Below, piece by piece: positions 6,786-17,159 of a stretch of DNA of 64,000 nt. The stretch is from Rebecca billardiae RCC1528. Its lineage: Eukaryota > Protista > Haptophyta. The stretch is from contig OZ251246.1 of NCBI GenBank assembly GCA_965240325.2, positions 310,001-374,000 on the forward strand, in the 5' to 3' direction. The position numbers and the translations under genes were made by a program. How positions within the stretch are numbered: the first letter of the stretch is position 1; each line of letters opens with the position of its first letter. The notes under the pieces were generated by a model. That model was not told the origin of the DNA and made no database searches. It worked only from the letters and a program-made list of their open reading frames with translations.

Positions 6786-7974
6786 TGCCCCAGTTGTGCT
6801 CTGCCGACAGAAAAAGTACCGAGCTGACGGCGGGGCAGCGCACGCGCGGCGGCCCGCCGTCGTCGCCCGTCATCGCCACCTCGTCCGTGTCGTAGTGCAG
6901 CTGGTGCCCCGCGTCCGTCGCGCGCGAGTGCACCCACCACTCCGCCCAGCCCATGCGCAGCCCGCGCCACTTGGACGCGCCGGCGACGAGCGCGCGCGTG
7001 TCTTCGTTGGCGTGCGCGGTGCAGAGACCCGAGGCGGCGGTGGCCTCGACGAGCGGCTGGAGGTGGGCGATGAGCTCGGCGATCGGCCCGCCCGCGCGCA
7101 CCGCGCTCGGCGGCTCGGCCTCCGCGCCGCGCGCGCGCTTGCGCCGCGCGCCCGCCGCCTCGCGGCTCGCGCGCGCCTGCGCAGTCACCGCCTCGAGAGA
7201 CAGCGGGCGCAAGTACGAAAAGAAATTGCGAGTCGGATATTCGTGCTCCTTCCAGAAGGAGGCCTCCGGGCTGAGCGCGGCGCGCACCCGCGAGGCGAGC
7301 CCTGGGGGGAGCACGCCGTCGAGCACGCGCACCGGCGTGGTCTGCGTCGCGCCCACGCCCAGCGCCGCGTGGCTCGGCGGCGGCGGCAGCGGCGCGGCGG
7401 GCGGCGGCGCGGCGGGCGGCGGCGGCGGCGGCATCAGAATCTGCGGCGAGAGCTTGAGGCGGACGGCGAGCTTCTCGAGGTACACGTCGGCGGCGGCGTG
7501 CCGCCCCGTCTGCGTGAGCAGCAGCGCGAGCTCGTGCAGCGCGGACGCGCCCGCGCTCAGCTGCGCGACCAGCGCCGGGTCCTCCGCCCACTCCGCGCAC
7601 GCTTCATCATCCTCCTCGTCGCCGTACTCCTCCCACGCGTGCCAGACGGCCTCGAGCGCGCCGCGCCAGTCGGCCTCGGCGAGCGCGTGCGCGCCCATCG
7701 AGCGGTGCAGCGAGCCGCGCAGCAGCAGCGCCTCGGCCGACTCGGGGCACGACTCGAGCGCGCGCTGGCACAAGTGAATGGCGGCATCCGAGCTCTGGCC
7801 GCGCTCGGCGCGGCGCGCGCCCTCGATGCACACGTCCGCCTCGAGCATGCGCGCAGAGGGGCCATCGATGCGCGCGATCCGCGCGAGCAGCGCGCCCACG
7901 TCCGCCGTCGGCCGCTCGAGAAGCCGGCCGAACTCCTCGACGCAACGCTCGAGCTCGCTGTGCGAGGGCGGCAT
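5740..7974 (-). CDS. TPR-repeat plus 2OG-Fe(II) oxygenase-like protein
   Basis: 744-aa ORF. N-terminal TPR-like helices (AIHLCQRALESCPESAEALLLRG). Dioxygenase motifs AEWWVH, HQLHYD (HxD), SSVLFLS, GGPTVV, LFDGSLLHGVIP (distal His) and RRLTLMIGWW. Confidence 0.8.
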
Positions 7975-8206
7975 GGGGGCGGCGTGCTCCGCAAAGCACG
8001 AGCGCGTGGCCGAGCGCAGTGCTTCCGCCCCCGTGCGTCGTTCTCGACGTTCGGCAGCTTCTCACCTTTTAACCGTGCTACTTGTAGCCGGTACTCACCT
8101 TCACAATGTACGGGTCGGCGCGCGCGGCCACCCTTTATTTCTTTGGCCACGCCATCGTGCCGGCAAAGCCCGCGTCAAGGCCGCTGCTGGGTTGTTGACC
8201 ACACGG

Positions 8207-9799
8207 ATGGCGTGGCCCTGGCCCTGCGGCTGGCGGCGGCAGGCAGACGGGCCGCCGGCGCGGCGCGACGGGCCCATCAAGCCCCCCGCCGTCCAAGGCC
8301 GCCGCGTCAGCATCGTCGTCGACAGCCTCGACGATTCTCGCGCCGGGCGCGCGGCGGGCGAGCAGCTTGCGCGAAGCTTGGTCGGGCGTGCCGAGGGGGC
8401 GGCTGGGTCCTGCTGCTTCGCCCGCGCGTGCTGCGACTGCGAGCCGGTCGCCGCCCAGCTCCTCACGCACCAAGGCGAGCGCCTCCACCATCTCACCCGC
8501 CTCGTCTGCCAGCGCGCGCACGCGATGCTCTGGGTACACGACGCTCGAAGCTGGAGCGCAAGCGCGCACCCGCGAAGCGACGCGGCGGAGGAGCTGGCGC
8601 GGCTGCTCGAGGCGGCGCTGCAGCGGCCGTACCTGCGGCTGGCGTGCATGAGCGAGGTGCCCATCGCGCTCGTCATCATCACCGACGACCACCGCGCCGA
8701 TCAGGCCGGACCGGTGGCCGTGTTGCGCCGTGCGCCGGCCGCGCGCGCGGCGCACGGCGCAGGCGGCCGCGGCGGCGGCGCGCGCGGCGGCGCCGAGCCG
8801 AGCTCGTCGTGGCCGTTCATCGCGCAGACGGGCGTAGACGGCCGGTTGTACTGGCCGGGAGAGCCGGACGCGTCCGCCATGCCCGTGCCCGTCTTTGCGG
8901 CGCCGGCGCACGTCAACTCCCACAGCATGGCCGCCGCCGGCCGCAGTGTCAGCGCGCCTGCGGCCGATGGCATCGGGGGACATAGTCCGGTGGCGGACGC
9001 GCGCGCGGACGGGGGCTCGGGCGGTGGCTCGGCGCCGGCGGATGGGCTCGAGAGCGCCGTCCTCTGGGCCGTGGCGGAGGTGCTGCAGCGCAGGCGGCGC
9101 GCCGCGCACGCGCTGGAATCCGCGCTACTCGCATCCGCGAGCGCGCCGCCGCTCGCGATTCCGCCGACGTGGGCGGCGCCGCCGTCGGGACAGCACGGCC
9201 GCGCGCAGTCGCACTGGTGGCTGCCGTGGCGACCGTGGCGCGAGCGCGGCCTGCGACTGCTCCCGCCGCACCCGCCCGTGGCCCGGCTGCCGCTGCCGCC
9301 GTGCGCGTGCCGACATTTCCGCCAGTGTCCCTCCTGTCAGCTCACCAGGCAGGCGCGCGCCAACTGCGGCTGCGCGCAATCTCGAGTCGATCTCCCGTGG
9401 AGCACGCCGTGGCCGGTGCTGCGGCTGCTGCTGCTTGCGGCGGCGGCGGCGCCGGCGCGCGCGCACGGCGGCGACGACGCGGCCCGCTGCGCCGCGCAGG
9501 ACGCGGTGCAGCCGCGCGCCGGCGTGCAGCACGCGGCGCACAGCCTCGCGTGCGCGCTCGAGCCTACTGCACCAGCCTCCGGCGCACCGGCGCGCTGCGC
9601 CGAGCCAGCAGCAGCTGCTGCTGCGAGCACGCATTGCAGCCCCACGCCGGCGCCACCCGCCGGCAGCGCGGCCGCGTGCGGCGGCAGCCCGCTCGGCCGG
9701 CTCTCCTCCGATCTGATCGTGCTGATCGTGCGCCACCTCAACGCGCTCCACTGGTCGGAGTACGAGGCGCGCGTCGGGCACGTGCTCCGCCGAGTGTGA
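8207..9799 (+). CDS. Protein with degenerate Arf/Arl-like small-GTPase segment and C-terminal F-box/SOCS-like motif
   Basis: ATG at 8207 lies within ORF 7778-9799. AHAMLWVHDARS...AAEELARLL...VPIALVII resembles the Arf beta4-alpha3-beta5 region, but there is no P-loop. C-terminus LGRLSSDLIVLIVRHL. Confidence 0.5.
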   Translation: MAWPWPCGWRRQADGPPARRDGPIKPPAVQGRRVSIVVDSLDDSRAGRAAGEQLARSLVGRAEGAAGSCCFARACCDCEPVAAQLLTHQGERLHHLTRLVCQRAHAMLWVHDARSWSASAHPRSDAAEELARLLEAALQRPYLRLACMSEVPIALVIITDDHRADQAGPVAVLRRAPAARAAHGAGGRGGGARGGAEPSSSWPFIAQTGVDGRLYWPGEPDASAMPVPVFAAPAHVNSHSMAAAGRSVSAPAADGIGGHSPVADARADGGSGGGSAPADGLESAVLWAVAEVLQRRRRAAHALESALLASASAPPLAIPPTWAAPPSGQHGRAQSHWWLPWRPWRERGLRLLPPHPPVARLPLPPCACRHFRQCPSCQLTRQARANCGCAQSRVDLPWSTPWPVLRLLLLAAAAAPARAHGGDDAARCAAQDAVQPRAGVQHAAHSLACALEPTAPASGAPARCAEPAAAAAASTHCSPTPAPPAGSAAACGGSPLGRLSSDLIVLIVRHLNALHWSEYEARVGHVLRRV

Positions 9800-10697
9800 C
9801 GCTCGACTCGCTCGAGTTGTCGAGTCCTAGCCCTACGCGCTCTGCTACTGCTTATCTACTACGACAACCTCTCCGGGACGGAGTCGGAGTCAGCACTTAT
9901 AGAGTAGTACGACAGAGAATGACCGCGCCGACGTCCGGGGCACTCGGCCGCCCGCGCGCGGTCCGCAGCGCCATATTCCATCGGCCATAATAAAATGATA
10001 AATAACGACGCCGCAGTCCGCACGGGACTCGCGTGACGTGACGTACCCCGGTACCGGTACGGTCCGCGGCCGTGCTGGCGATCGGCACGCCGCACACGCG
10101 GTAGTAGTACTAGTACTCGTCATGGATAGTATACCGATCGTAGTCTTCGGACACTGTAATAAGTGAGTGCCATGACGCTTGATGAGTGTGACAGTGTCTT
10201 AGTATCTCACTGCCACGGCCGGGTGACCGGACTGGCTGCGGCACTGGCACTCGCTGGCTGACCGAGTAGTCGCCGCCGTATGAGTACGTACTGCTGATAT
10301 CGGCGGCCGGAGCATCGTCATCAATTATATCATCATCATCACTCAGGCTCAGCCGAGGGCGAGAAGATCGAGTCAGAATAATCGGCATCATCATCATCAA
10401 TCATCATCATTCATCAGCATCATCGGCATCGTCGTCATCAGTCGTCCGTCATGATGGCTGACGATGATGATATGATGCGCGCAGCGCGCGCACATGCGTA
10501 CGTCGTCTTACAAGTCAGAGACATCAGTTGATCATCACAGCGCAGTCCGAGTCACTGTCGAGACTGTCGACAAAATAGACATTCACGCGCGTGGGCTGGA
10601 GAGTGGAGTGCCCAGCAGAGCAGTCCGACGGTCCGACGAGCGCGTCCTGATGAACGATCTGGCCCCGCCGGGCGCCCGAGGACGTCTCGTCACGCCA

Positions 10698-11652
10698 TCA
10701 CTGGTCGGCCGCCGGCGCGCCGTCGGGCGCCCCGAGCAGCGCCAGCAGGCGCGCGTGCCCCGGGTGCAGCCGGCGGCAGATCTGCAGCGGCGTCTCATAT
10801 CGCAGCGACGTGGTGCGTGCCTGCTCCCGCTGCGAGAGGGCGGGCGGGGCGCTGGACGCGCGCGCCTCGAGCAGCAGCGCGAGCGCGTCGGCGTGGCCGT
10901 TCAGCACGGCCCAGTGCACCGGTGTGCGGTGCCACCGGTCGCGCCAGTCCAGTACGCCGCCCTTCCGCTCGCTGTACACACGCACCGCCCCGCCCGCGCC
11001 GCCGGCTGCCGCCGGCCGCGGGAGCCACGCGTCGAGCGCGACGCGGAGCGCGCCGAGCTGCCCCGCGCGCGCGGCGTGGTGCAGGATCGTCTGCTTGTTC
11101 GCGTCCTTCGCGGCGACGGGCGCGCCGGCGTCGAGCAGCAGCCGCAGCGCGTCGCCGCTCGAGCTCTGCGCCGCGGCGTGCGACGCCATGGCGCCGCGCA
11201 CCGACGGGCGGCGGACGTTTGCGCCCGCGTGGAGCAGCAGCCGGACCAGTCCGGCGTCGCCGCTCGCCGCGGCCGCGAAGAGCGGCGATGGCCGCACGCG
11301 CGAGCGTCGCAGCCGCGCGCTCGTGTGCGGCTGCGCCGGTGCAGCGCGCTGCGCGGGCACGGAGGCCGTCGCGGCCGCTCCCGCGAGCTCGCCGTCCCCG
11401 CCAGCCGCCACCACTGCCGCTGCCTCCTCCTCCTCCCCCCACCAGGCACCGAGGCCGCCACCGCTGCCGCCGCCGGCCAGGTCCGCATCCACGCCCCACC
11501 CGGCGCGCGCATCGTCGTCCGCGCCGCCGCGCGCCCCGCCGCCGTCTGGCGAGGCGCCGAGGCTGAGCAGCTCCGCAGCCGTCGCCCGCATCCGCGCGCT
11601 CACCGCCTGAAGCAGCGCCTCCTCCAGGTCCGGGCGCGCGCCGCCGCCCTCT

Positions 11653-11706
<54 letters not shown>

Positions 11707-14700
11707 TCCGTGCGCGTGAACTCGTCTTGCGCGCGCGCGTCGGCCGCGCCGTCCGGAGAAGCCCGGGCCGCGTGGCCACCCTCTTCTGCGGCAGTGCCGT
11801 CGCGCGCGGCCGCGGGCGCTGCCGCCTCCTCGCCCGCGAGCGCGCGCGCGCGCGTCGCGCCCAGTTCGATGCCACTCGCAGCGGACGCAGTCGTGTCCGC
11901 GCGCCCGCCCGCGGCGGCGGCTGTCGCGTCCGCGCGCCCGCCCGCGGCGGCGGCTGTCGCGTCCGCGCGCCCGCCCGCGGTGGCTCGGAGCAGGGCGTCG
12001 CCCACGCCCGCCGCGTCGAGGTGCGCCGCGTACCGCCGCACCGTCCGCTCGCGCACGAGGTGCTGCGCGGCGAGCGCTCCCTCGATCTGACCGTACTCGC
12101 CGCCTGCGAGCCGCGGCGCGCCGGCGTGCCCGCCCGATGTGCGCAGTAGCAGCGCGCGGCTTACTTGCAGGGCACCCAGCGAGTCCCCGCCGAGCGCGAA
12201 GAAGTCCGCGGCGGGCGGGAGCGACGGCTCGGCTTCGTCGGTTTCGTCGGTTTCGTCGGTTTCGTCCGTCGGCTTCGCGCGCGCGAAGCCGGCGGACGAA
12301 ACCGACGAAACCGACGAAGCCGAGGAGGCGGGCGCCCCCAGGTGGAGCACCTGCGCAAAGACCGCGCCGACCGCCCGCTCGGTCGGTGTGGCGCGCGCCC
12401 GCGCGCCCGCCGCGCCGCCGCCGTGCATGCGCGCGAGCGCGGCCGCGCACGCGTCCGCACCCGGCAGCCGCGCGCGCGCCACCTTGCCTGTCGGCGTGAG
12501 CGGGAGGGCGGCGACGAAGAAGACGGCCGTTGGCACAGCGTGTGCCGGCAGCGCGCGCCGGCAGCGCTCGAGCACGCACAGAGAGGAGAGCGCGTGGCAC
12601 ACCGGGGCTGCCGCCTCGGCCGCGGCGGCGGGCGCGGCCGCGGCGCCCGCGCGCGCGGATGCGGCCGAGGCGCGCGCCTGCGCCGCGCCCGCGCCCTGCG
12701 GCGGCGCAGCCAGCAGCTCGGCGCGCGCCTCGGCCGCAGGCACGCAGAAGGCACAGAGCTGGCCCGCGCGCAGCGCGACCGCGGCGGCGCTCACGAGCCC
12801 GGAGCCGGCGGTGAGCCCGGACTCGACCTCGACGCTGGAGACGCGATTCCCCCGGACTTTGAGCTGCGCGTCCGAGCGGCCGACGTACTCCAGAGCCCAG
12901 GTGCCCCCGGACTCCGGACTCCCCCGGGCTCCCGGACTCCCCCGGACTTTGCGCTGCGCGTCCGAGCGGCCCGCCGCCTCCGCGGGGGCGGCCTGGGGCG
13001 CGGCATCGAGCTCGACAGCGCCGGAGCTCGCGGCGCCCTCGCCGCCGCCGCCCGGCGCGGCGGGCGCGGCGTCGTCGTCGCCGCTGTCGCACGCGCCGCC
13101 GCTCGGCACGCGCACCCAGCGTACCAGGTCAGAGGTCCGGTACAGCCGGAGTCGATCTGCGTCGGCGCGTGGGCCGGCGCGCGCCACGCCCGAGCCATCG
13201 AACGGGCGCAGCGCTCGCAGCTCGTCCTCATCTCGCGCCTGCACGAACGGTGACGGCCCCGGCGGCGGCGGCGGCGGCGGCCGCGCCGCGGCGGCGGCGG
13301 CGGTGCCACGCTCAGCGGCAGCCCGCCCCGGCGGCACGGCCGCACTCGCCGCGGGCTGGGCGGTCTCGTCGTCGACCGCCGCCGCCTCCTCCTCGTCGGC
13401 TGGCAAGTAGCCCAGCCCGACCTGCACCCCGCCCAGCACCAGCTCGCCCTCGCCGCCACTGGCAGGCTGCACAGCCACCCCCAACTCCAACCCTACCCCT
13501 AACCCGAGTGAGGTGTCGCGCGCCGCGCGTGCGCCCTGGTGGAGCTCTGAGCGCTCTGCGTGCGCCTCCGCGTCCTCACTCTCCTCAGCCCCCTTCGGCC
13601 TTCTGAGCACGTACACATCGACGCCTGCCAGCGGCACGCCGAGCAGACGGCAGTCCGCCGCGCCGCGCACGCGGTGCGCGGTCTGGTAGACGGTGGCCTC
13701 GGTGACGCCGTACGTGTTGAGCAGGCGCACGCGCGGCGCCCACGCCTCGGCGAGCTGCTCCGACATCGGCTCGCCGCCCAGCGCCACCGTGCGCAGGCTC
13801 GGGAGCGGCGCGTGCGCGGGCACAGAAGCCCAGAGCGCAGGCGTGGTGCAAACGTGGGTAATATTCAGCGCGGCGAGGCAGCGCGGGAGCGCGTCGCGCA
13901 CGTCGTCGCGCGCCGCGCCCACGCACACCGTCGCGCCCGCCGCGAGCGCCGCGCTCCAGTCGCCGATCGACGGGTCGAAGGTGAGAGGGGAGGCGAGGAG
14001 AACGCGCGCGCTCGCGCGCACGCGGTGCGCATCATTCTTGGCGCGCGCGTAGCTGCGCAGCGAGCGCATGGCGACGACGCAGCCCTTGGGCTCGGCCGTG
14101 CTCCCCGACGTGAAGAAGACGTGCGAGAGCAGCCCGTCGGCCGCAGCCTCCTCCGCCACGGCGCCGCGCGCGTCCGCCGCGTCCGCGGCGGGGCCAGCTG
14201 GTGCGGCTGCCCGCGCCGCGGCCTCAGCCGAACCACTGTCCGCCTCCGCGGCCGCGCCTGCCGTGTGCGCGTGCGCGTGCGTGTCGGCGAGCGCGTCGAC
14301 GGCGATCACGACGGGCACGTACGCCGCCGCGCCCCGTCGCTCACCCGCCCGCGCGGCCGCCGCCTCAAGCCCCGCGCGCAGCCGCGGCGCGGCGCGCCGG
14401 TCCGCAAGCACCGCGGCGGCGCGCACGCGGCGCACGAGGCGCGCGTGGCGCGCGGGCGGGTCTCGCGGGTCGACGGGCACGACGACAGCGCCGGCGAACC
14501 ACACCGCCAGCTGCGCGACGACCATGGCCGCGCCCTCGTCCACGCTCACCACGACGGCCGGCTGCGCGCCGAACGCGCGCAGCGCGGCACACGGCGTGAG
14601 CGCCGCGCGCGCCGCGAGCTCATGGGCGAGGGCGCGTGCGCGCGCGGCGAGGGCCGAGCGCGAGAGCGTGCGGATCGCCGAGGTCTGCACGTCGAGCTCC

Positions 14701-14774
14701 TCGATGGCCGGCGCGTCCGCGCCGCCGCTGAGGCCGAGCCAGGCCAAGCCGGGCCGCTCGAGCTCAGCCGCCAT
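10698..14774 (-). CDS. NRPS-like enzyme: AASDH/ACSF4-type adenylation domain, peptidyl carrier (T) domain and C-terminal ankyrin repeats
   Basis: Single long ORF; ATG at 14774 (alternative 14840). A-domain motifs [70 protein letters not shown] and LPLTPTGKV. Carrier motif [10 protein letters not shown]. Ankyrin repeats SPLFAAA, TILHHAA and [11 protein letters not shown]. Confidence 0.9.
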
Positions 14775-14938
14775 CGTGGTGGCGCGGTTCGTCAATCCTG
14801 GATTCCTGGATCGATGTCCGATGTCAACGACGACAGCCATCGTTGAAGTCTGGACGCACAGCGCTGAGGCGGGCAAGAGTTCAGAGTGGCGGCAGCCAAC
14901 CGCAGGCCCTGGTCCCCTTGGCCGCAAGCGCTGCAAGC

Positions 14939-15595
14939 ATGTCGACCCCGGCGCGCCGCAGGCTGATGCGCGACTTCAAGCGGCTGCAGAGCGACCCGCC
15001 GCAAGGCGTGTCCGGCGCGCCAAAGGACAACGACATCATGAAGTGGAACGCAGTCATCTTCGGGTGCGCGGCGCGCGCCGACGGACGCGCTCGCGTCCCC
15101 GCGACGCGGCCTTTTACACGTGCGCGGCATGTGCGGCCTGCACCGCGCCAGGCCGGACGACACGCCATGGGAGGACGGGACGTTCCGGCTGCAGCTCGAG
15201 TTCACCGAGGACTACCCGAACAAGGCGCCCACCGTCAAGTTCGTGACGAAACTCTTCCACCCGAACGTGTACGCGGACGGCTCGATCTGCCTCGACATTC
15301 TGCAGAATCAGTGGTCGCCGATCTACGACATCTCGGCGATCCTCACGTCGATCCAGTCGCTGCTCTGCGACCCGAACCCGAATAGCCCGGCCAACTCCGA
15401 GGCAGCGCGGCTGTACCAGGTGCGATGGCCGCGCGGCACGCCGCCGCGCGACGCAACTGCCCGCCGGGCGCTCAACGCGGGTCATCGCGCCGGCGGCTGC
15501 GCACGTGCGTGCGCGCGCAGGAGAACCGACGTGAATACGAGCGCAAGGTGAAGGAGATCGTGGAGCAGAGCTGGGCAGCCGAGTCCGTCGAGTAG
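14939..15595 (+). CDS. RAD6: Ubiquitin-conjugating enzyme E2, Rad6/UBC2 family; exons 14939-15063, 15152-15419, 15521-15595
   Basis: [17 protein letters not shown]...WNAVIFG|[11 protein letters not shown]...[22 protein letters not shown]...ARLYQ|[18 protein letters not shown]. Both GT-AG introns restore the frame and the catalytic Cys is present. Confidence 0.97.
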
Positions 15596-16127
15596 CGCCC
15601 GCTCCGGGCTGCCGGTATCCCGGCAGCCCTGCGCGCAGCATGGGGCCGCGTGTGCGGGCGCGCGCTCCATGCGTCCGGGTGCGCCTTGCACCCGCCAATG
15701 GGCTGGCCTGCGGTGTGACCGCTCGTCGTTGCACTCGGCGCTCGCGCCAGCCGATGAAGGCGGTCGGGTGAGGACGACGGCCGACAAGACGGTGCTGACG
15801 GTGTGCCCACGCGCAGACGAAAGCGGTATTAATCGTCTGAGCTGCTGCCCACGCGCGGCGGGCCGCGGCGGCGCGGCATTGCGATTTGCGTGCCGGCGGG
15901 CGGCGTGCAGGTCGAACGTCGGACGCGCCAGCATGGCGCCTGGATGGCGCTGCAGCCCCAGCCGGATGCATCGTCATCTCATCATCAATGTTATTGCATA
16001 GCGGATATATGCTGCTGTACTGTGGTACTGTTGCAGTCACGCGGGCTGTGACAGTGTCACTGACACTCACTAGTCACTGAGACGACGACTCCGCCTGCAC
16101 TGAGTGCACACGCCCCGGCCGATCACG

Positions 16128-17159
16128 ATGGTTGACAACTCGGTGAGCCGCAAGTGTGATCACGCGGGCTGCACCACGCAACCGTCGTTCGGCATGCCGG
16201 GTGACGCGCGCGCCAGCCGGTGCGCTGCTCATAAGCTGGCCGGCATGGTCGACCTGATCAACCGCAGGTGTGATCACACCGGCTGCGCCACGCGGGTTTC
16301 GTTTGGCATGCCGGGCGACTCGCGCCCGAGCCGTTGCGCTACGCACAAGCTAGCCGGCATGGTCAACGTGATGAACCCCAAGTGCGATCACGCTGGCTGC
16401 ACCAAGCAGCCTTCACTCGGCATGCCGGGCGACGCGCGCGCCAGCCGGTGCGCCACGCACAAGCTGGCCGGCATGGTCAACGTGGTGAGCCGCAGGTGTG
16501 ATCACGCCGGCTGCACCACGCACCCTTCATTGGGCATGCCGGGCGCGCGCCCCAGCCGGTGCGCTGCGCACAAGCTGGCCGGCATGGTGAACGTGGCGAA
16601 GCGCACGACGTGTGATCACGCCGGCTGCACCAAGGTGCCTTCATTCGGTATGCCGGGCGACGCGCGCCCCAGCCGGTGCGCTACGCACAAGCCGGCCGGC
16701 ATGATCGATGTGAGGAGCCCCAAGTGTGATCACGCGGGCTGCACCAAGGGGCCTTCGTTCGGCATGCCGGGTGATGAGCGCGCCAGCCGGTGCGCCACGC
16801 ACAAGTTGGCCGGCATGGTGAACGTGAAGAGCAGCAAGTGTGATCACGCGGGCTGCACCAAGTGGCCTTCATTCGGCATGCCGGGCGATGCGCGCCCCAG
16901 CCGGTGCGCTACGCACAAGCTGGCCACCATGGAGCGCTTTCGGAGTGGTGTGCACAAGCGCGGGCTGGAGCAAGCCATGAGCACCAACGCATCGAGCGCC
17001 GCCAAGCGACAGAGGAAGCGCACCAGCAGCACAGCCACTGCTCCGGATGTCGCGGCGCGGCCACGATCGCCGCCGCTGCCGCCGCTGGTCACAGCCAGCA
17101 TCGTATCGGCGGCGCCGCCGAATGTTCCTGTGGTGATGGCCACTTGGCCAGGCGGGTGA
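16128..17159 (+). CDS. EsV-1-7 cysteine-rich repeat protein (7 repeats)
   Basis: Seven ~39-aa repeats CDHAGCTKxPSFGMPGDARxSRCATHKLAGMVNV match the EsV-1-7 C-x4-C...C-x2-H pattern. Basic C-terminal KRQRKR; intronless. Confidence 0.88.
   Translation: MVDNSVSRKCDHAGCTTQPSFGMPGDARASRCAAHKLAGMVDLINRRCDHTGCATRVSFGMPGDSRPSRCATHKLAGMVNVMNPKCDHAGCTKQPSLGMPGDARASRCATHKLAGMVNVVSRRCDHAGCTTHPSLGMPGARPSRCAAHKLAGMVNVAKRTTCDHAGCTKVPSFGMPGDARPSRCATHKPAGMIDVRSPKCDHAGCTKGPSFGMPGDERASRCATHKLAGMVNVKSSKCDHAGCTKWPSFGMPGDARPSRCATHKLATMERFRSGVHKRGLEQAMSTNASSAAKRQRKRTSSTATAPDVAARPRSPPLPPLVTASIVSAAPPNVPVVMATWPGG

What the first reader, a model, noticed from the sequence alone, without database searches (positions are those of the whole stretch)
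10698..14774. AASDH-type adenylation-carrier enzyme ending in ankyrin repeats (A-T-ANK): candidate protein-modifying system
Seen: a complete A domain, a carrier domain with the GGDSL phosphopantetheine Ser, then ankyrin repeats, with no condensation, thioesterase or reductase domain. Known: the ASPLTFDPS and ALGGE motifs resemble AASDH/ACSF4, the beta-alanine-activating enzyme, which ends in a PQQ-like propeller; ankyrins bind proteins. Inference: the activated amino acid is delivered to a protein partner or substrate recruited by the ankyrins, i.e. a possible non-ribosomal aminoacylation PTM or a trans-acting release system. Motif A7 reads YRTSDL instead of YRTGDL.
Basis: partly seen in the sequence, partly recalled or inferred. 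Interest (0 to 1): 0.8.

Follow-up and report, generated by a model that had tools for sequence, protein, structure and literature searches.

The report
Algal adenylation-carrier-ankyrin enzyme, unstudied family
This alga carries an intact gene for a one-module, NRPS-like enzyme that should load an amino acid onto its own carrier arm and ends in six ankyrin repeats. It belongs to a widespread but unstudied family of eukaryotic enzymes, so its substrate and its target are still unknown.

Summary
Window 10698-14774 (minus strand) is one 1358-codon ORF encoding a full adenylation (A) domain, a carrier (T) domain with the GGDS serine, and six ankyrin repeats. There is no condensation, thioesterase, reductase or PQQ domain.

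It is not a one-off. 101 of the 120 best database hits have the same A-T-Ank layout. They come from chytrids, a choanoflagellate, green picoalgae (Bathycoccus), haptophytes, dinoflagellates, Chromera, a diatom and diplonemids, and some are transcript-derived.

The family is monophyletic against its nearest bacterial NRPS relatives. Its substrate-pocket code is almost invariant (D-P-G-x-A-G-T-V-Y-K), and the window protein has it exactly. The carrier serine is invariant.

"AASDH-type" is not supported: the nearest outside relatives retrieved are bacterial NRPS modules. No AASDH sequence could be fetched, so a direct tree was not possible. The protein-modification idea is untested.

The window copy is a divergent member of a minority subtype. 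27% of it is in-frame low-complexity insert, and it has rare substitutions in core motifs A3, A7 and A8.

I found no functional study; one paper mentions such fusions in Symbiodiniaceae. No RNA run was listed.

The parts
10698..14774 (-). Whole coding sequence: 1358 codons plus the stop at 10698-10700. Apparently a single exon.
   Evidence: ORF list. GC3 profile and start choice. All conserved blocks lie in one frame.
12465..14717 (-). Adenylation domain, about aa 20-770, with core motifs A1-A10 and several low-complexity inserts.
   Evidence: Pfam AMP-binding E 7e-43 and TIGR01733 E 7e-56. Motif alignment with 103 relatives. Best solved match is the linear gramicidin synthetase A-T region.
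14094..14096 (-). A3 motif deviation: Ala227 in [10 protein letters not shown], where 98 of 103 relatives have Gly.
13974..13976 (-). Asp267 of the FDPS motif. It corresponds to PheA Asp235, the residue that binds the substrate amino group. Invariant in 103 of 103 relatives.
   Evidence: The register was set by hand against the A4/A5 motifs.
13131..13133 (-). A7 motif deviation: Ser548 in YRTSDL, where 101 of 103 relatives have Gly.
12939..12971 (-). Partial in-frame duplicate of the A8 motif ([11 protein letters not shown], aa 602-612), lying inside the 60-aa insert between A7 and A8.
   Evidence: Read from the translation. An 18-bp tandem repeat lies beside it.
12822..12881 (-). True A8 motif, [20 protein letters not shown] (aa 632-651). 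Ser646 stands where 95 of 103 relatives have Glu.
12483..12485 (-). A10 catalytic Lys764 (GKVAR). Invariant in the family.
11997..12398 (-). Carrier (T/PCP) domain, aa 793-926. It is split by two loop inserts. The phosphopantetheine serine is Ser865, at 12180-12182.
   Evidence: Pfam PP-binding 17.8 bits, below the cut-off. Gly and Ser of GGDS are invariant in 89 of 89 sequences. Four-helix AF2 model. Foldseek top hits are almost all PCP/ACP carrier domains.
11640..11996 (-). Low-complexity linker, aa 927-1045: a 33-bp repeat (x2.9) encoding [11 protein letters not shown], and a poly-Gly run.
   Evidence: Tandem Repeats Finder. No Pfam hit. The linker varies in length among relatives.
10725..11639 (-). 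Ankyrin domain, aa 1046-1350: six repeats plus a cap. A disordered insert of about 80 aa (11295-11531) follows repeat 1.
   Evidence: Pfam Ank families. AF2 pLDDT above 90 in the repeats. Foldseek matches DARPins and ankyrin-1.

Best explanation
The locus is an intact, probably intronless gene for a stand-alone NRPS-like enzyme with the layout A-T-(ankyrin)6. It belongs to a widespread, uncharacterised eukaryotic family.

Shown here:
- The three domains are present and lie in one frame.
- The family is monophyletic against its nearest bacterial relatives.
- The ten pocket positions are nearly fixed across the family (D-P-G-x-A-G-T-V-Y-K), and the window protein carries the second commonest version exactly.
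- The Asp that binds a substrate amino group, the A10 lysine and the carrier serine are invariant.

Inferred mechanism:
- The A domain adenylates one particular small amino-type acid, the same one across the family.
- It thioesterifies that acid onto the phosphopantetheine arm of its own T domain.
- Because there is no condensation, thioesterase or reductase domain in cis, the ankyrin solenoid docks a partner that takes the acyl group. The partner could be a trans-acting enzyme or an acceptor protein.

The window copy belongs to a minority subtype. That subtype lacks the Cys-containing C-terminal tail found in about three quarters of the family.
For: - Domains.
- Same architecture in 101 of the 120 best hits. 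The taxa include chytrids, Salpingoeca, Bathycoccus, Tetraselmis, Mesostigma, Prasinoderma, Cymbomonas, Pavlovales, Diacronema, Symbiodiniaceae, Polykrikos, Gymnodinium, Chromera, Pseudo-nitzschia and two diplonemids. Two ESM Atlas clusters of 66 and 60 members share it.
- Monophyly against the nearest bacterial NRPS A-T regions has SH-aLRT 100.
- Pocket code: D235, P236, G301 and K517 in 103 of 103, Y331 in 102 of 103. The window reads DPGCAGTVYK, shared with 16 other members (17 of 103).
- The GGDS serine is invariant in 89 of 89 sequences.
- All 12 inserts (364 aa) are in frame. They have tandem-repeat periods of 3, 9, 18 and 33 bp and the same synonymous-codon bias as the conserved blocks.
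- The Diacronema orthologue is a single exon.
- By its ankyrin region the window groups with diatom and dinoflagellate tail-less members (SH-aLRT 88; motif count).
Against: - No biochemical data exist for any member, so the substrate, the acceptor and the role of the ankyrins are all inferred.
- The window protein alone combines three rare substitutions at catalytic-motif positions conserved in at least 92% of the family (A3 G227A, A7 G548S, A8 E646S). It sits on a long branch of 1.13 against a median of 0.56.
- No RNA run was listed, so expression and the absence of in-frame introns are unproven.
- In this 73% GC DNA, long stop-free frames occur by chance.
- PP-binding scores below Pfam's cut-off in this copy.
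- No conserved gene neighbour points to a partner.
Confidence: 0.6

Rival explanations
1. The window copy is a catalytically weakened or dead paralogue: a scaffold, a pseudoenzyme or a gene under relaxed selection.
For: Three rare substitutions in core motifs A3, A7 and A8, and no other of the 103 relatives combines them. Six mismatches at 90 highly conserved columns, against a family median of 2. 27% low-complexity inserts, including about 60 aa at the hinge before A8. A long branch outside the 30-row core clade. A second copy elsewhere in the genome (unchecked note).
Against: The pocket code is exactly canonical, and Asp235, the A5 Thr-Glu, the A7 Asp, the A8 Gly-Arg and Asp, the A10 Lys and the carrier Ser are all kept. 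There is no frameshift or stop over 4 kb. 25 other members have as many or more mismatches. Another member (P0241) also carries an insert at the A7-A8 site. From general knowledge, the A3 Gly is replaced in active fatty-acyl-AMP ligases.
Confidence: 0.22
2. It is the protist counterpart of AASDH/ACSF4-U26: the same beta-alanine-activating A-T core, with the PQQ-like propeller swapped for ankyrin repeats.
For: The overall logic is the same (A-T plus a C-terminal repeat domain, with no release domain). AASDH is described as a beta-alanine activator possibly involved in post-translational modification (PMC10531068). No animal protein appeared among the family hits retrieved here.
Against: No protein named as AASDH or beta-alanine-activating enzyme was among the 120 best of 227 hits to the pocket region, although such proteins fall in the length range searched. 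Bacterial NRPS modules scored better. The Atlas neighbours of the A-T part are all bacterial. There is no PQQ domain. No AASDH sequence could be obtained, so this was never tested head to head.
Confidence: 0.1
3. The gene model is wrong: some low-complexity stretches are in-frame introns, or the A-T and Ank parts are separate genes read through by chance in GC-rich DNA.
For: Stop-free frames of 200-765 codons occur in other frames of the same DNA. The genome has short GT-AG introns (88 nt in the neighbouring E2 gene). Two inserts have lower GC3, 0.70 and 0.77. No RNA data are available.
Against: Twelve inserts are all multiples of three. If they were introns of random length, the chance of that is about (1/3)^12. 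Repeat periods are multiples of 3 and codon bias matches the conserved parts. The fusion is conserved in more than 100 proteins, including transcripts. There is no start-codon context or domain gap between T and Ank other than a repeat linker.
Confidence: 0.08

Closest known systems
Uncharacterised eukaryotic A-T-Ank proteins, for example Diacronema lutheri KFE25_007697, Pavlovales sp. CCMP2436 T492DRAFT_910689, Salpingoeca rosetta PTSG_07767, Chromera velia Cvel_22784, Bathycoccus prasinos CAL6421113, and the ESM Atlas cluster 'Ligase/ankyrin repeat fused protein'
   Same: Same domain order, same pocket code, invariant carrier serine, six ankyrin repeats, and the W-x-R-T-x-x-H-W-A signature in the fifth repeat.
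   Different: The window protein is only 37-53% identical to them. It carries 364 aa of low-complexity inserts and has rare A3, A7 and A8 substitutions. It lacks the Cys-containing tail (ERRAxCxAxERP...LLGGSGxTK) present in 77 of 103 members.
AASDH / ACSF4-U26, the vertebrate beta-alanine-activating enzyme (A-T-PQQ-like propeller)
   Same: A stand-alone eukaryotic A-T enzyme with a C-terminal repeat domain and no release domain. A protein-modifying role has been proposed for it but is not proven (PMC10531068).
   Different: The C-terminal domain here is ankyrin, not a PQQ-like propeller. Sequence searches did not bring AASDH up as a near relative. The substrate of the A-T-Ank family is unknown.
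Ebony (insect A-T plus amine-selecting domain) and fungal or animal A-T-R enzymes (Lys2, carboxylic acid reductases, glycine betaine reductase ATRR)
   Same: Monomodular NRPS-like enzymes that load one acid on their own carrier.
   Different: Those enzymes carry a catalytic off-loading domain in cis (a transferase or reductase). This family has only a protein-binding solenoid.
Bacterial NRPS modules; the closest solved structure is LgrA of linear gramicidin synthetase (6mfz, 9be3)
   Same: Canonical amino-acid A domain followed by a PCP. The better-matching LgrA stretch is its second A domain, which activates glycine (that assignment is from general knowledge). E 3e-80 for the Gymnodinium relative.
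   Different: There is no condensation domain or multimodular context. The pocket has P236, G239, A299 and G301, which are smaller side chains than in the LgrA glycine pocket as read from the alignment. It is of eukaryotic nuclear origin.
Monofunctional NRPS/PKS domains fused to ankyrin, HEAT or PPR repeats in Symbiodiniaceae (Beedessee et al. 2019, PMC6361889)
   Same: The only published mention I found of such fusions. The Symbiodiniaceae members of this family (Durusdinium, Symbiodinium) may be among the proteins that paper refers to; I did not check this.
   Different: The paper notes the fusions in passing as probable trans-acting units of secondary metabolism. It does not define the eukaryote-wide family, its fixed pocket code, or any function.

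Membership tests
NRPS-type amino-acid adenylation domain (ANL superfamily) | Significant match to AMP-binding / TIGR01733 profiles | tested here: met
   PF00501 E 7e-43 (147 bits, cut-off 29.9). TIGR01733 E 7e-56, but 189.8 bits is below its 317.4 cut-off, probably because inserts split the match.
NRPS-type amino-acid adenylation domain (ANL superfamily) | Core motifs A3-A10 with catalytic residues (A5 TE, A7 D, A8 GRxD, A10 K) and the amino-group-binding Asp235 | tested here: met
   All are present. Three neighbouring conserved residues deviate: A3 G to A, A7 G to S, A8 E to S.
NRPS-type amino-acid adenylation domain (ANL superfamily) | ATP-dependent activation of an amino acid | not testable with these tools
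   Needs ATP-PPi exchange or a hydroxamate assay.
Peptidyl carrier (T/PCP) domain | Pfam PP-binding above the gathering score | tested here: not met
   17.8 bits against 20.8 in the window protein. Relatives P0001, P0233 and P0234 pass.
Peptidyl carrier (T/PCP) domain | GGxS serine at the start of helix 2 of a four-helix bundle | tested here: met
   Ser865 in ALGGDSL. The Gly and Ser are invariant in 89 of 89 sequences. The AF2 model has four helices with the serine at the start of helix 2. Nearly all of the top 50 Foldseek hits are PCP/ACP, with target TM-scores of 0.7-0.8 for the isolated carrier domains among them but E of 0.07 or higher.
Peptidyl carrier (T/PCP) domain | Phosphopantetheinylation | not testable with these tools
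   Needs mass spectrometry of the expressed protein.
Ankyrin repeat domain | Repeated helix-turn-helix units matching Ank profiles and forming a solenoid | tested here: met
   PF12796 E 2e-14, PF00023 E 1e-9. Six repeats with pLDDT above 90. Foldseek E 1e-8 to DARPins and ankyrin-1.
Eukaryotic A-T-Ank family (unnamed) | A-T region falls inside the clade, separate from bacterial NRPS | tested here: met
   SH-aLRT 100 for the 39-row eukaryotic clade that includes the window. The window lies outside the 30-row core on a long branch.
Eukaryotic A-T-Ank family (unnamed) | Pocket code D-P-G-x-A-G-T-V-Y-K | tested here: met
   The window reads DPGCAGTVYK, the code of 17 of 103 members. The register was set by hand.
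Eukaryotic A-T-Ank family (unnamed) | C-terminal tail ERRAxCxAxERP...LLGGSGxTK (majority subtype) | tested here: not met
   The window ends ...[27 protein letters not shown], with no Cys segment. It groups with the tail-less diatom and dinoflagellate members.
AASDH / ACSF4-U26 | C-terminal PQQ-like beta-propeller | tested here: not met
   No PQQ or propeller family matched in Pfam at E up to 0.1. The C-terminus is ankyrin.
AASDH / ACSF4-U26 | A domain orthologous to the AASDH A domain | tested here: inconclusive
   No AASDH-named protein was among the 120 best hits or the Atlas neighbours. However, the search scores only the 8000 candidates that share most words, and no AASDH sequence could be obtained for a tree.
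AASDH / ACSF4-U26 | Activates beta-alanine | not testable with these tools
   Needs an enzyme assay.
Ebony / Lys2 / carboxylic acid reductase type A-T-X enzymes | Catalytic off-loading domain in cis (amine-selecting transferase or NAD(P)H reductase) | tested here: not met
   No such Pfam family matched. The T-to-Ank linker is low-complexity repeat.

The most novel reading that the evidence does not exclude
The A-T-Ank family is an old, eukaryote-wide non-ribosomal aminoacyl-transfer system. The enzyme loads one fixed small amino-type acid on its own arm, and the ankyrin solenoid recruits a specific protein that receives it. That would be a post-translational aminoacylation made without ribosome or tRNA. 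It would have two ancient subtypes, with and without the Cys tail, serving different acceptors.
Probability: 0.12. Interest if true: 0.85.

Novelty: new variant of a known kind. Interest (0 to 1): 0.55.

Why it matters
Stand-alone A-T-X enzymes are the few NRPS relatives that have entered core eukaryotic biology: Lys2, Ebony, AASDH and glycine betaine reductase. This work shows that a further variant, A-T-ankyrin, is conserved from chytrids and choanoflagellates to diplonemids and the abundant ocean picoalga Bathycoccus. It has a nearly frozen substrate pocket and an invariant carrier serine, yet no substrate, product or partner is known.

A fixed pocket across such distant lineages suggests one conserved metabolite or modification rather than lineage-specific secondary metabolism. 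Compact orthologues in tractable organisms (Salpingoeca rosetta, Spizellomyces, Bathycoccus, diatoms) make the question directly testable.

The window gene itself is a divergent, insert-laden paralogue. It is useful mainly as a natural variant of the A3, A7 and A8 motifs.

Tried and rejected
1. The exhaustive representative search with the full-length family profile was swamped by giant multimodular NRPSs, whose summed scores fill the top 150.
2. RNA evidence: no run was listed for 10300-15300, so read laying could not be used.
3. The metagenome contig scan for close relatives found only two distant (26-27% identity) NRPS loci, so no dN/dS or indel comparison with near orthologues was possible.
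4. Synteny: the neighbours of the Diacronema, Pavlovales and Spizellomyces genes share nothing with each other or with the window's E2 neighbour. I therefore rejected the idea that the adjacent ubiquitin-conjugating enzyme is a functional partner.
5. AASDH, Ebony and Lys2 sequences could not be obtained from any tool, and the Drozak 2014 paper is not held. The requested tree is therefore missing.
6. Substrate prediction: the pocket region's best solved matches are a mix of NRPS A domains. From memory, several of them activate glycine (LgrA module 2, DhbF). No code match was found in the literature. I give no substrate call beyond 'small amino-type acid'.
7. Rfam: no RNA family in the window.
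8. The bacterial promoter/terminator scan is irrelevant for this eukaryote.
Full report
**What is there**

The window is very GC-rich (0.57-0.80 in 2-kb steps), so stop-free frames of several hundred codons occur in all six frames. The frame on the minus strand from 14936 to 10698 is nevertheless a real gene.

From Met55 of that ORF (14774) the product is 1358 aa. Pfam finds:
- AMP-binding at aa 57-394 (E 7e-43)
- a weak AMP-binding_C at 734-764
- a sub-threshold PP-binding at 846-875 (17.8 bits against a 20.8 cut-off)
- ankyrin families at 1165-1306

NCBIfam's best match is the amino-acid adenylation domain TIGR01733 (E 7e-56). No condensation, thioesterase, reductase, PQQ or other domain matched.

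The start at 14774 is supported in three ways. GC3 rises from about 0.7 to 0.85-1.0 exactly there. Relatives start at the equivalent position. A RAD6-like E2 gene starts at 14939 on the other strand, leaving 164 bp between the two start codons.

**Is it one gene?**

No RNA run was listed, so the evidence is comparative.

- Compared with its two first-found relatives, the protein has 12 extra stretches of 8-60 aa. Together they make 364 aa, or 27% of the protein. All are in frame. They are built largely of tandem repeats with periods of 3, 9, 18 and 33 bp.
- The inserts use the same synonymous codons as the conserved blocks (GCG over GCC, GGC, CGC, CCG). GC3 is 0.87 in the inserts against 0.91 in the conserved blocks.
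- Introns of random length would not all be multiples of three. The neighbouring E2 gene shows what a local intron looks like: 88 nt, GT-AG.
- The same A-T-Ank chain is found as complete ORFs in transcriptome assemblies of Gymnodinium smaydae and Polykrikos kofoidii. It is also a single-exon gene in Diacronema lutheri.

I therefore take the fusion as real. One or two in-frame introns cannot be excluded.

**The domains**

Adenylation domain. Motifs A3 to A10 align with 103 relatives.

Carrier domain. It scores poorly only because two loops are expanded:
- Helix 1 ([12 protein letters not shown]) is followed by a Ser/Thr/Asp/Glu-rich insert.
- Helix 2 starts at Ser865 of ALGGDSL.
- A second loop then precedes helices 3 and 4 ([20 protein letters not shown]).
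- With an 89-sequence family alignment, AlphaFold2 gives this four-helix arrangement (pLDDT above 90 in the helices).
- The top 50 Foldseek hits are almost all peptidyl or acyl carrier proteins, though with weak E-values.
- The Gly and Ser of GGDS are invariant in all 89 sequences.

Ankyrin region. It folds as six repeats plus a cap (pLDDT above 90, pTM 0.75). A disordered Gly/Ala/Asp-rich loop of about 80 residues follows the first repeat. The fold matches ordinary ankyrin solenoids. Conservation in this region is mostly at structural ankyrin positions, so nothing there looks catalytic.

**The family**

A first search with the whole protein found only two relatives with the same layout, probably because low-complexity words crowded the candidate list. 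Searching with the ankyrin half of the Gymnodinium protein, and with the clean pocket region of the window protein (aa 205-400), opened the family up.

- 101 of the 120 best hits to the pocket region are AMP-binding plus Ank proteins of 765-1552 aa.
- Named sources are:
  - about a dozen chytrid genera
  - the choanoflagellate Salpingoeca rosetta
  - the green algae Bathycoccus (a 693-member cluster, much of it from ocean metagenomes), Tetraselmis, Mesostigma, Prasinoderma and Cymbomonas
  - the haptophytes Diacronema and Pavlovales sp.
  - the dinoflagellates Durusdinium, Symbiodinium, Polykrikos and Gymnodinium
  - Chromera velia
  - the diatom Pseudo-nitzschia
  - the diplonemids Lacrimia and Artemidia
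- The ESM Atlas holds two such clusters.
- All are annotated as hypothetical or by generic domain names.
- In a tree of the A-T region, the eukaryotic proteins form one clade against the nearest bacterial NRPS modules (SH-aLRT 100). Chytrids, haptophytes and dinoflagellates each form their own clades. This pattern looks mostly vertical, but the backbone is unresolved, so age versus transfer is open.

**What is conserved**

Using the usual ten pocket positions (register set by hand on the A4/A5 motifs; the register reproduces I299-G301-G322 for the valine domain of LgrA in the alignment), the family is almost fixed:
- D235, P236, G301 and K517 in 103 of 103
- Y331 in 102
- A299 in 94
- G239 in 89
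- V330 in 85
- T322 in 69
- position 278 varies (L, C, T or Q)

The window reads DPGCAGTVYK, the second commonest version. A retained Asp235 implies a substrate with an amino group. I can say no more about the substrate. I found no published match to this code.

**How this copy differs**

- At the 90 columns conserved in at least 88% of the family, the window has six mismatches. The median is 2, and the window ranks 26th of 103.
- Three of the mismatches are in catalytic motifs: A3 [10 protein letters not shown] (G to A, 98 of 103 have G), A7 YRTSDL (G to S, 101 of 103 have G) and A8 RVSSVEVE (E to S, 95 of 103 have E). No other member combines them.
- The catalytic residues themselves are kept.
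- The 60-aa insert between A7 and A8 contains a partial duplicate of the A8 motif. A metagenomic relative also has an insert at that site.
- 77 of 103 members end in a conserved tail, ERRAxCxAxERP...GDIAxLLGGSGxTK. The window, the Gymnodinium, Polykrikos and P0233 proteins and the diatom protein lack the Cys part and share a different last repeat, K-x-T-S-L-R-x-E-x-P-L.
- In a tree of the ankyrin region the window groups with these tail-less members (SH-aLRT 88).
- Polykrikos has both subtypes.
- An earlier, unchecked note of this scan reports a second A-T-ankyrin gene on another piece of this genome. Other agents' notes call the organism a haptophyte. I did not verify either point.

**Mechanism**

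Shown: the domains, their order, the conserved pocket, the conserved serine, and the absence of a release domain.

Inferred: adenylation of one amino-type acid, thioester loading on Ser865-Ppant, and off-loading to a partner docked by the ankyrins.

The main rival is that this particular copy is catalytically weakened. The canonical pocket argues against full decay.

**Comparison with known systems**

There is no PQQ domain. The next-best hits after the family are bacterial C-A-T NRPS modules at 31-41% identity over the pocket region. The Atlas neighbours of the A-T part are bacterial stand-alone A-T proteins.
- I could not obtain an AASDH, Ebony or Lys2 sequence from any tool, and Drozak et al. 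2014 is not held. A sister relationship to AASDH is therefore neither shown nor excluded.
- Literature searches for the architecture, for locus tags and for the pocket code found no functional study.
- Beedessee et al. 2019 (PMC6361889) remark that monofunctional NRPS/PKS domains of Symbiodiniaceae are often fused to ankyrin, HEAT or PPR repeats.
- Reviews of eukaryotic monomodular NRPS-like enzymes list Ebony, ACSF4-U26, glycine betaine reductase and carboxylic acid reductases, but not this layout.

**Verdict**

The interesting object is the family rather than this copy: a broadly conserved, unstudied A-T-ankyrin enzyme with a frozen pocket. The protein-modification reading is possible but has no support yet.

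Noticed in passing
window 14939-15419 (+): A RAD6/UBC2-like ubiquitin-conjugating enzyme gene is transcribed divergently from the A-T-Ank gene, with 164 bp between the two start codons. Exon 1 is 14939-15063, followed by an 88-nt GT-AG intron (15064-15151). Exon 2 runs to about 15419; later exons were not mapped. This pairing is not seen next to the Diacronema, Pavlovales or Spizellomyces orthologues.
   Followed up: partly
window 16104-17159 (+): A 351-aa ORF made of seven to eight EsV-1-7 cysteine-rich repeats (CDHAGCTxxPSFGMPGDxRxSRCAxHKLAGMVNV; PF19114, E 1.5e-96). It lies in a stretch of lower GC (0.57).
   Followed up: partly
relatives P0002, P0255, P0260, P0308, P0330, P0334 and others (C-termini): About three quarters of the family (77 of 103) end in a conserved tail, AERRAxCxAxERPxGxRASVFGDIAxLLGGSGxTK, with a near-invariant cysteine. 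No Pfam family matched the tail in the tail-bearing relative that was scanned (P0002). It could be part of the off-loading chemistry. The window protein lacks the Cys segment.
   Followed up: partly
P0344 (Effrenium voratum, 1137 aa); P0329 (1404 aa): Domain-swap variants inside the same A-T clade. P0344 has a metallophosphoesterase (PF00149) in place of the ankyrins and sits next to the tail-less dinoflagellate members in the tree. P0329 adds an OST-HTH/LOTUS domain.
   Followed up: no
window 12939-12971 (-) versus 12852-12881 (-): The A8 core GRSDAQ(R/L)KVRG occurs twice, 30 residues apart. The upstream copy lies in the insert and lacks the preceding hydrophobic strand, so it looks like a recent partial in-frame duplication.
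   Followed up: partly
It may be the canonical, Cys-tail paralogue of this alga.
   Followed up: no
window 7778-9799 and other frames around 8000-16000: Very long stop-free frames (up to 765 codons) overlap the gene and its flanks in several frames, simply because of the GC content. ORF length alone is no evidence of a gene in this genome.
   Followed up: no
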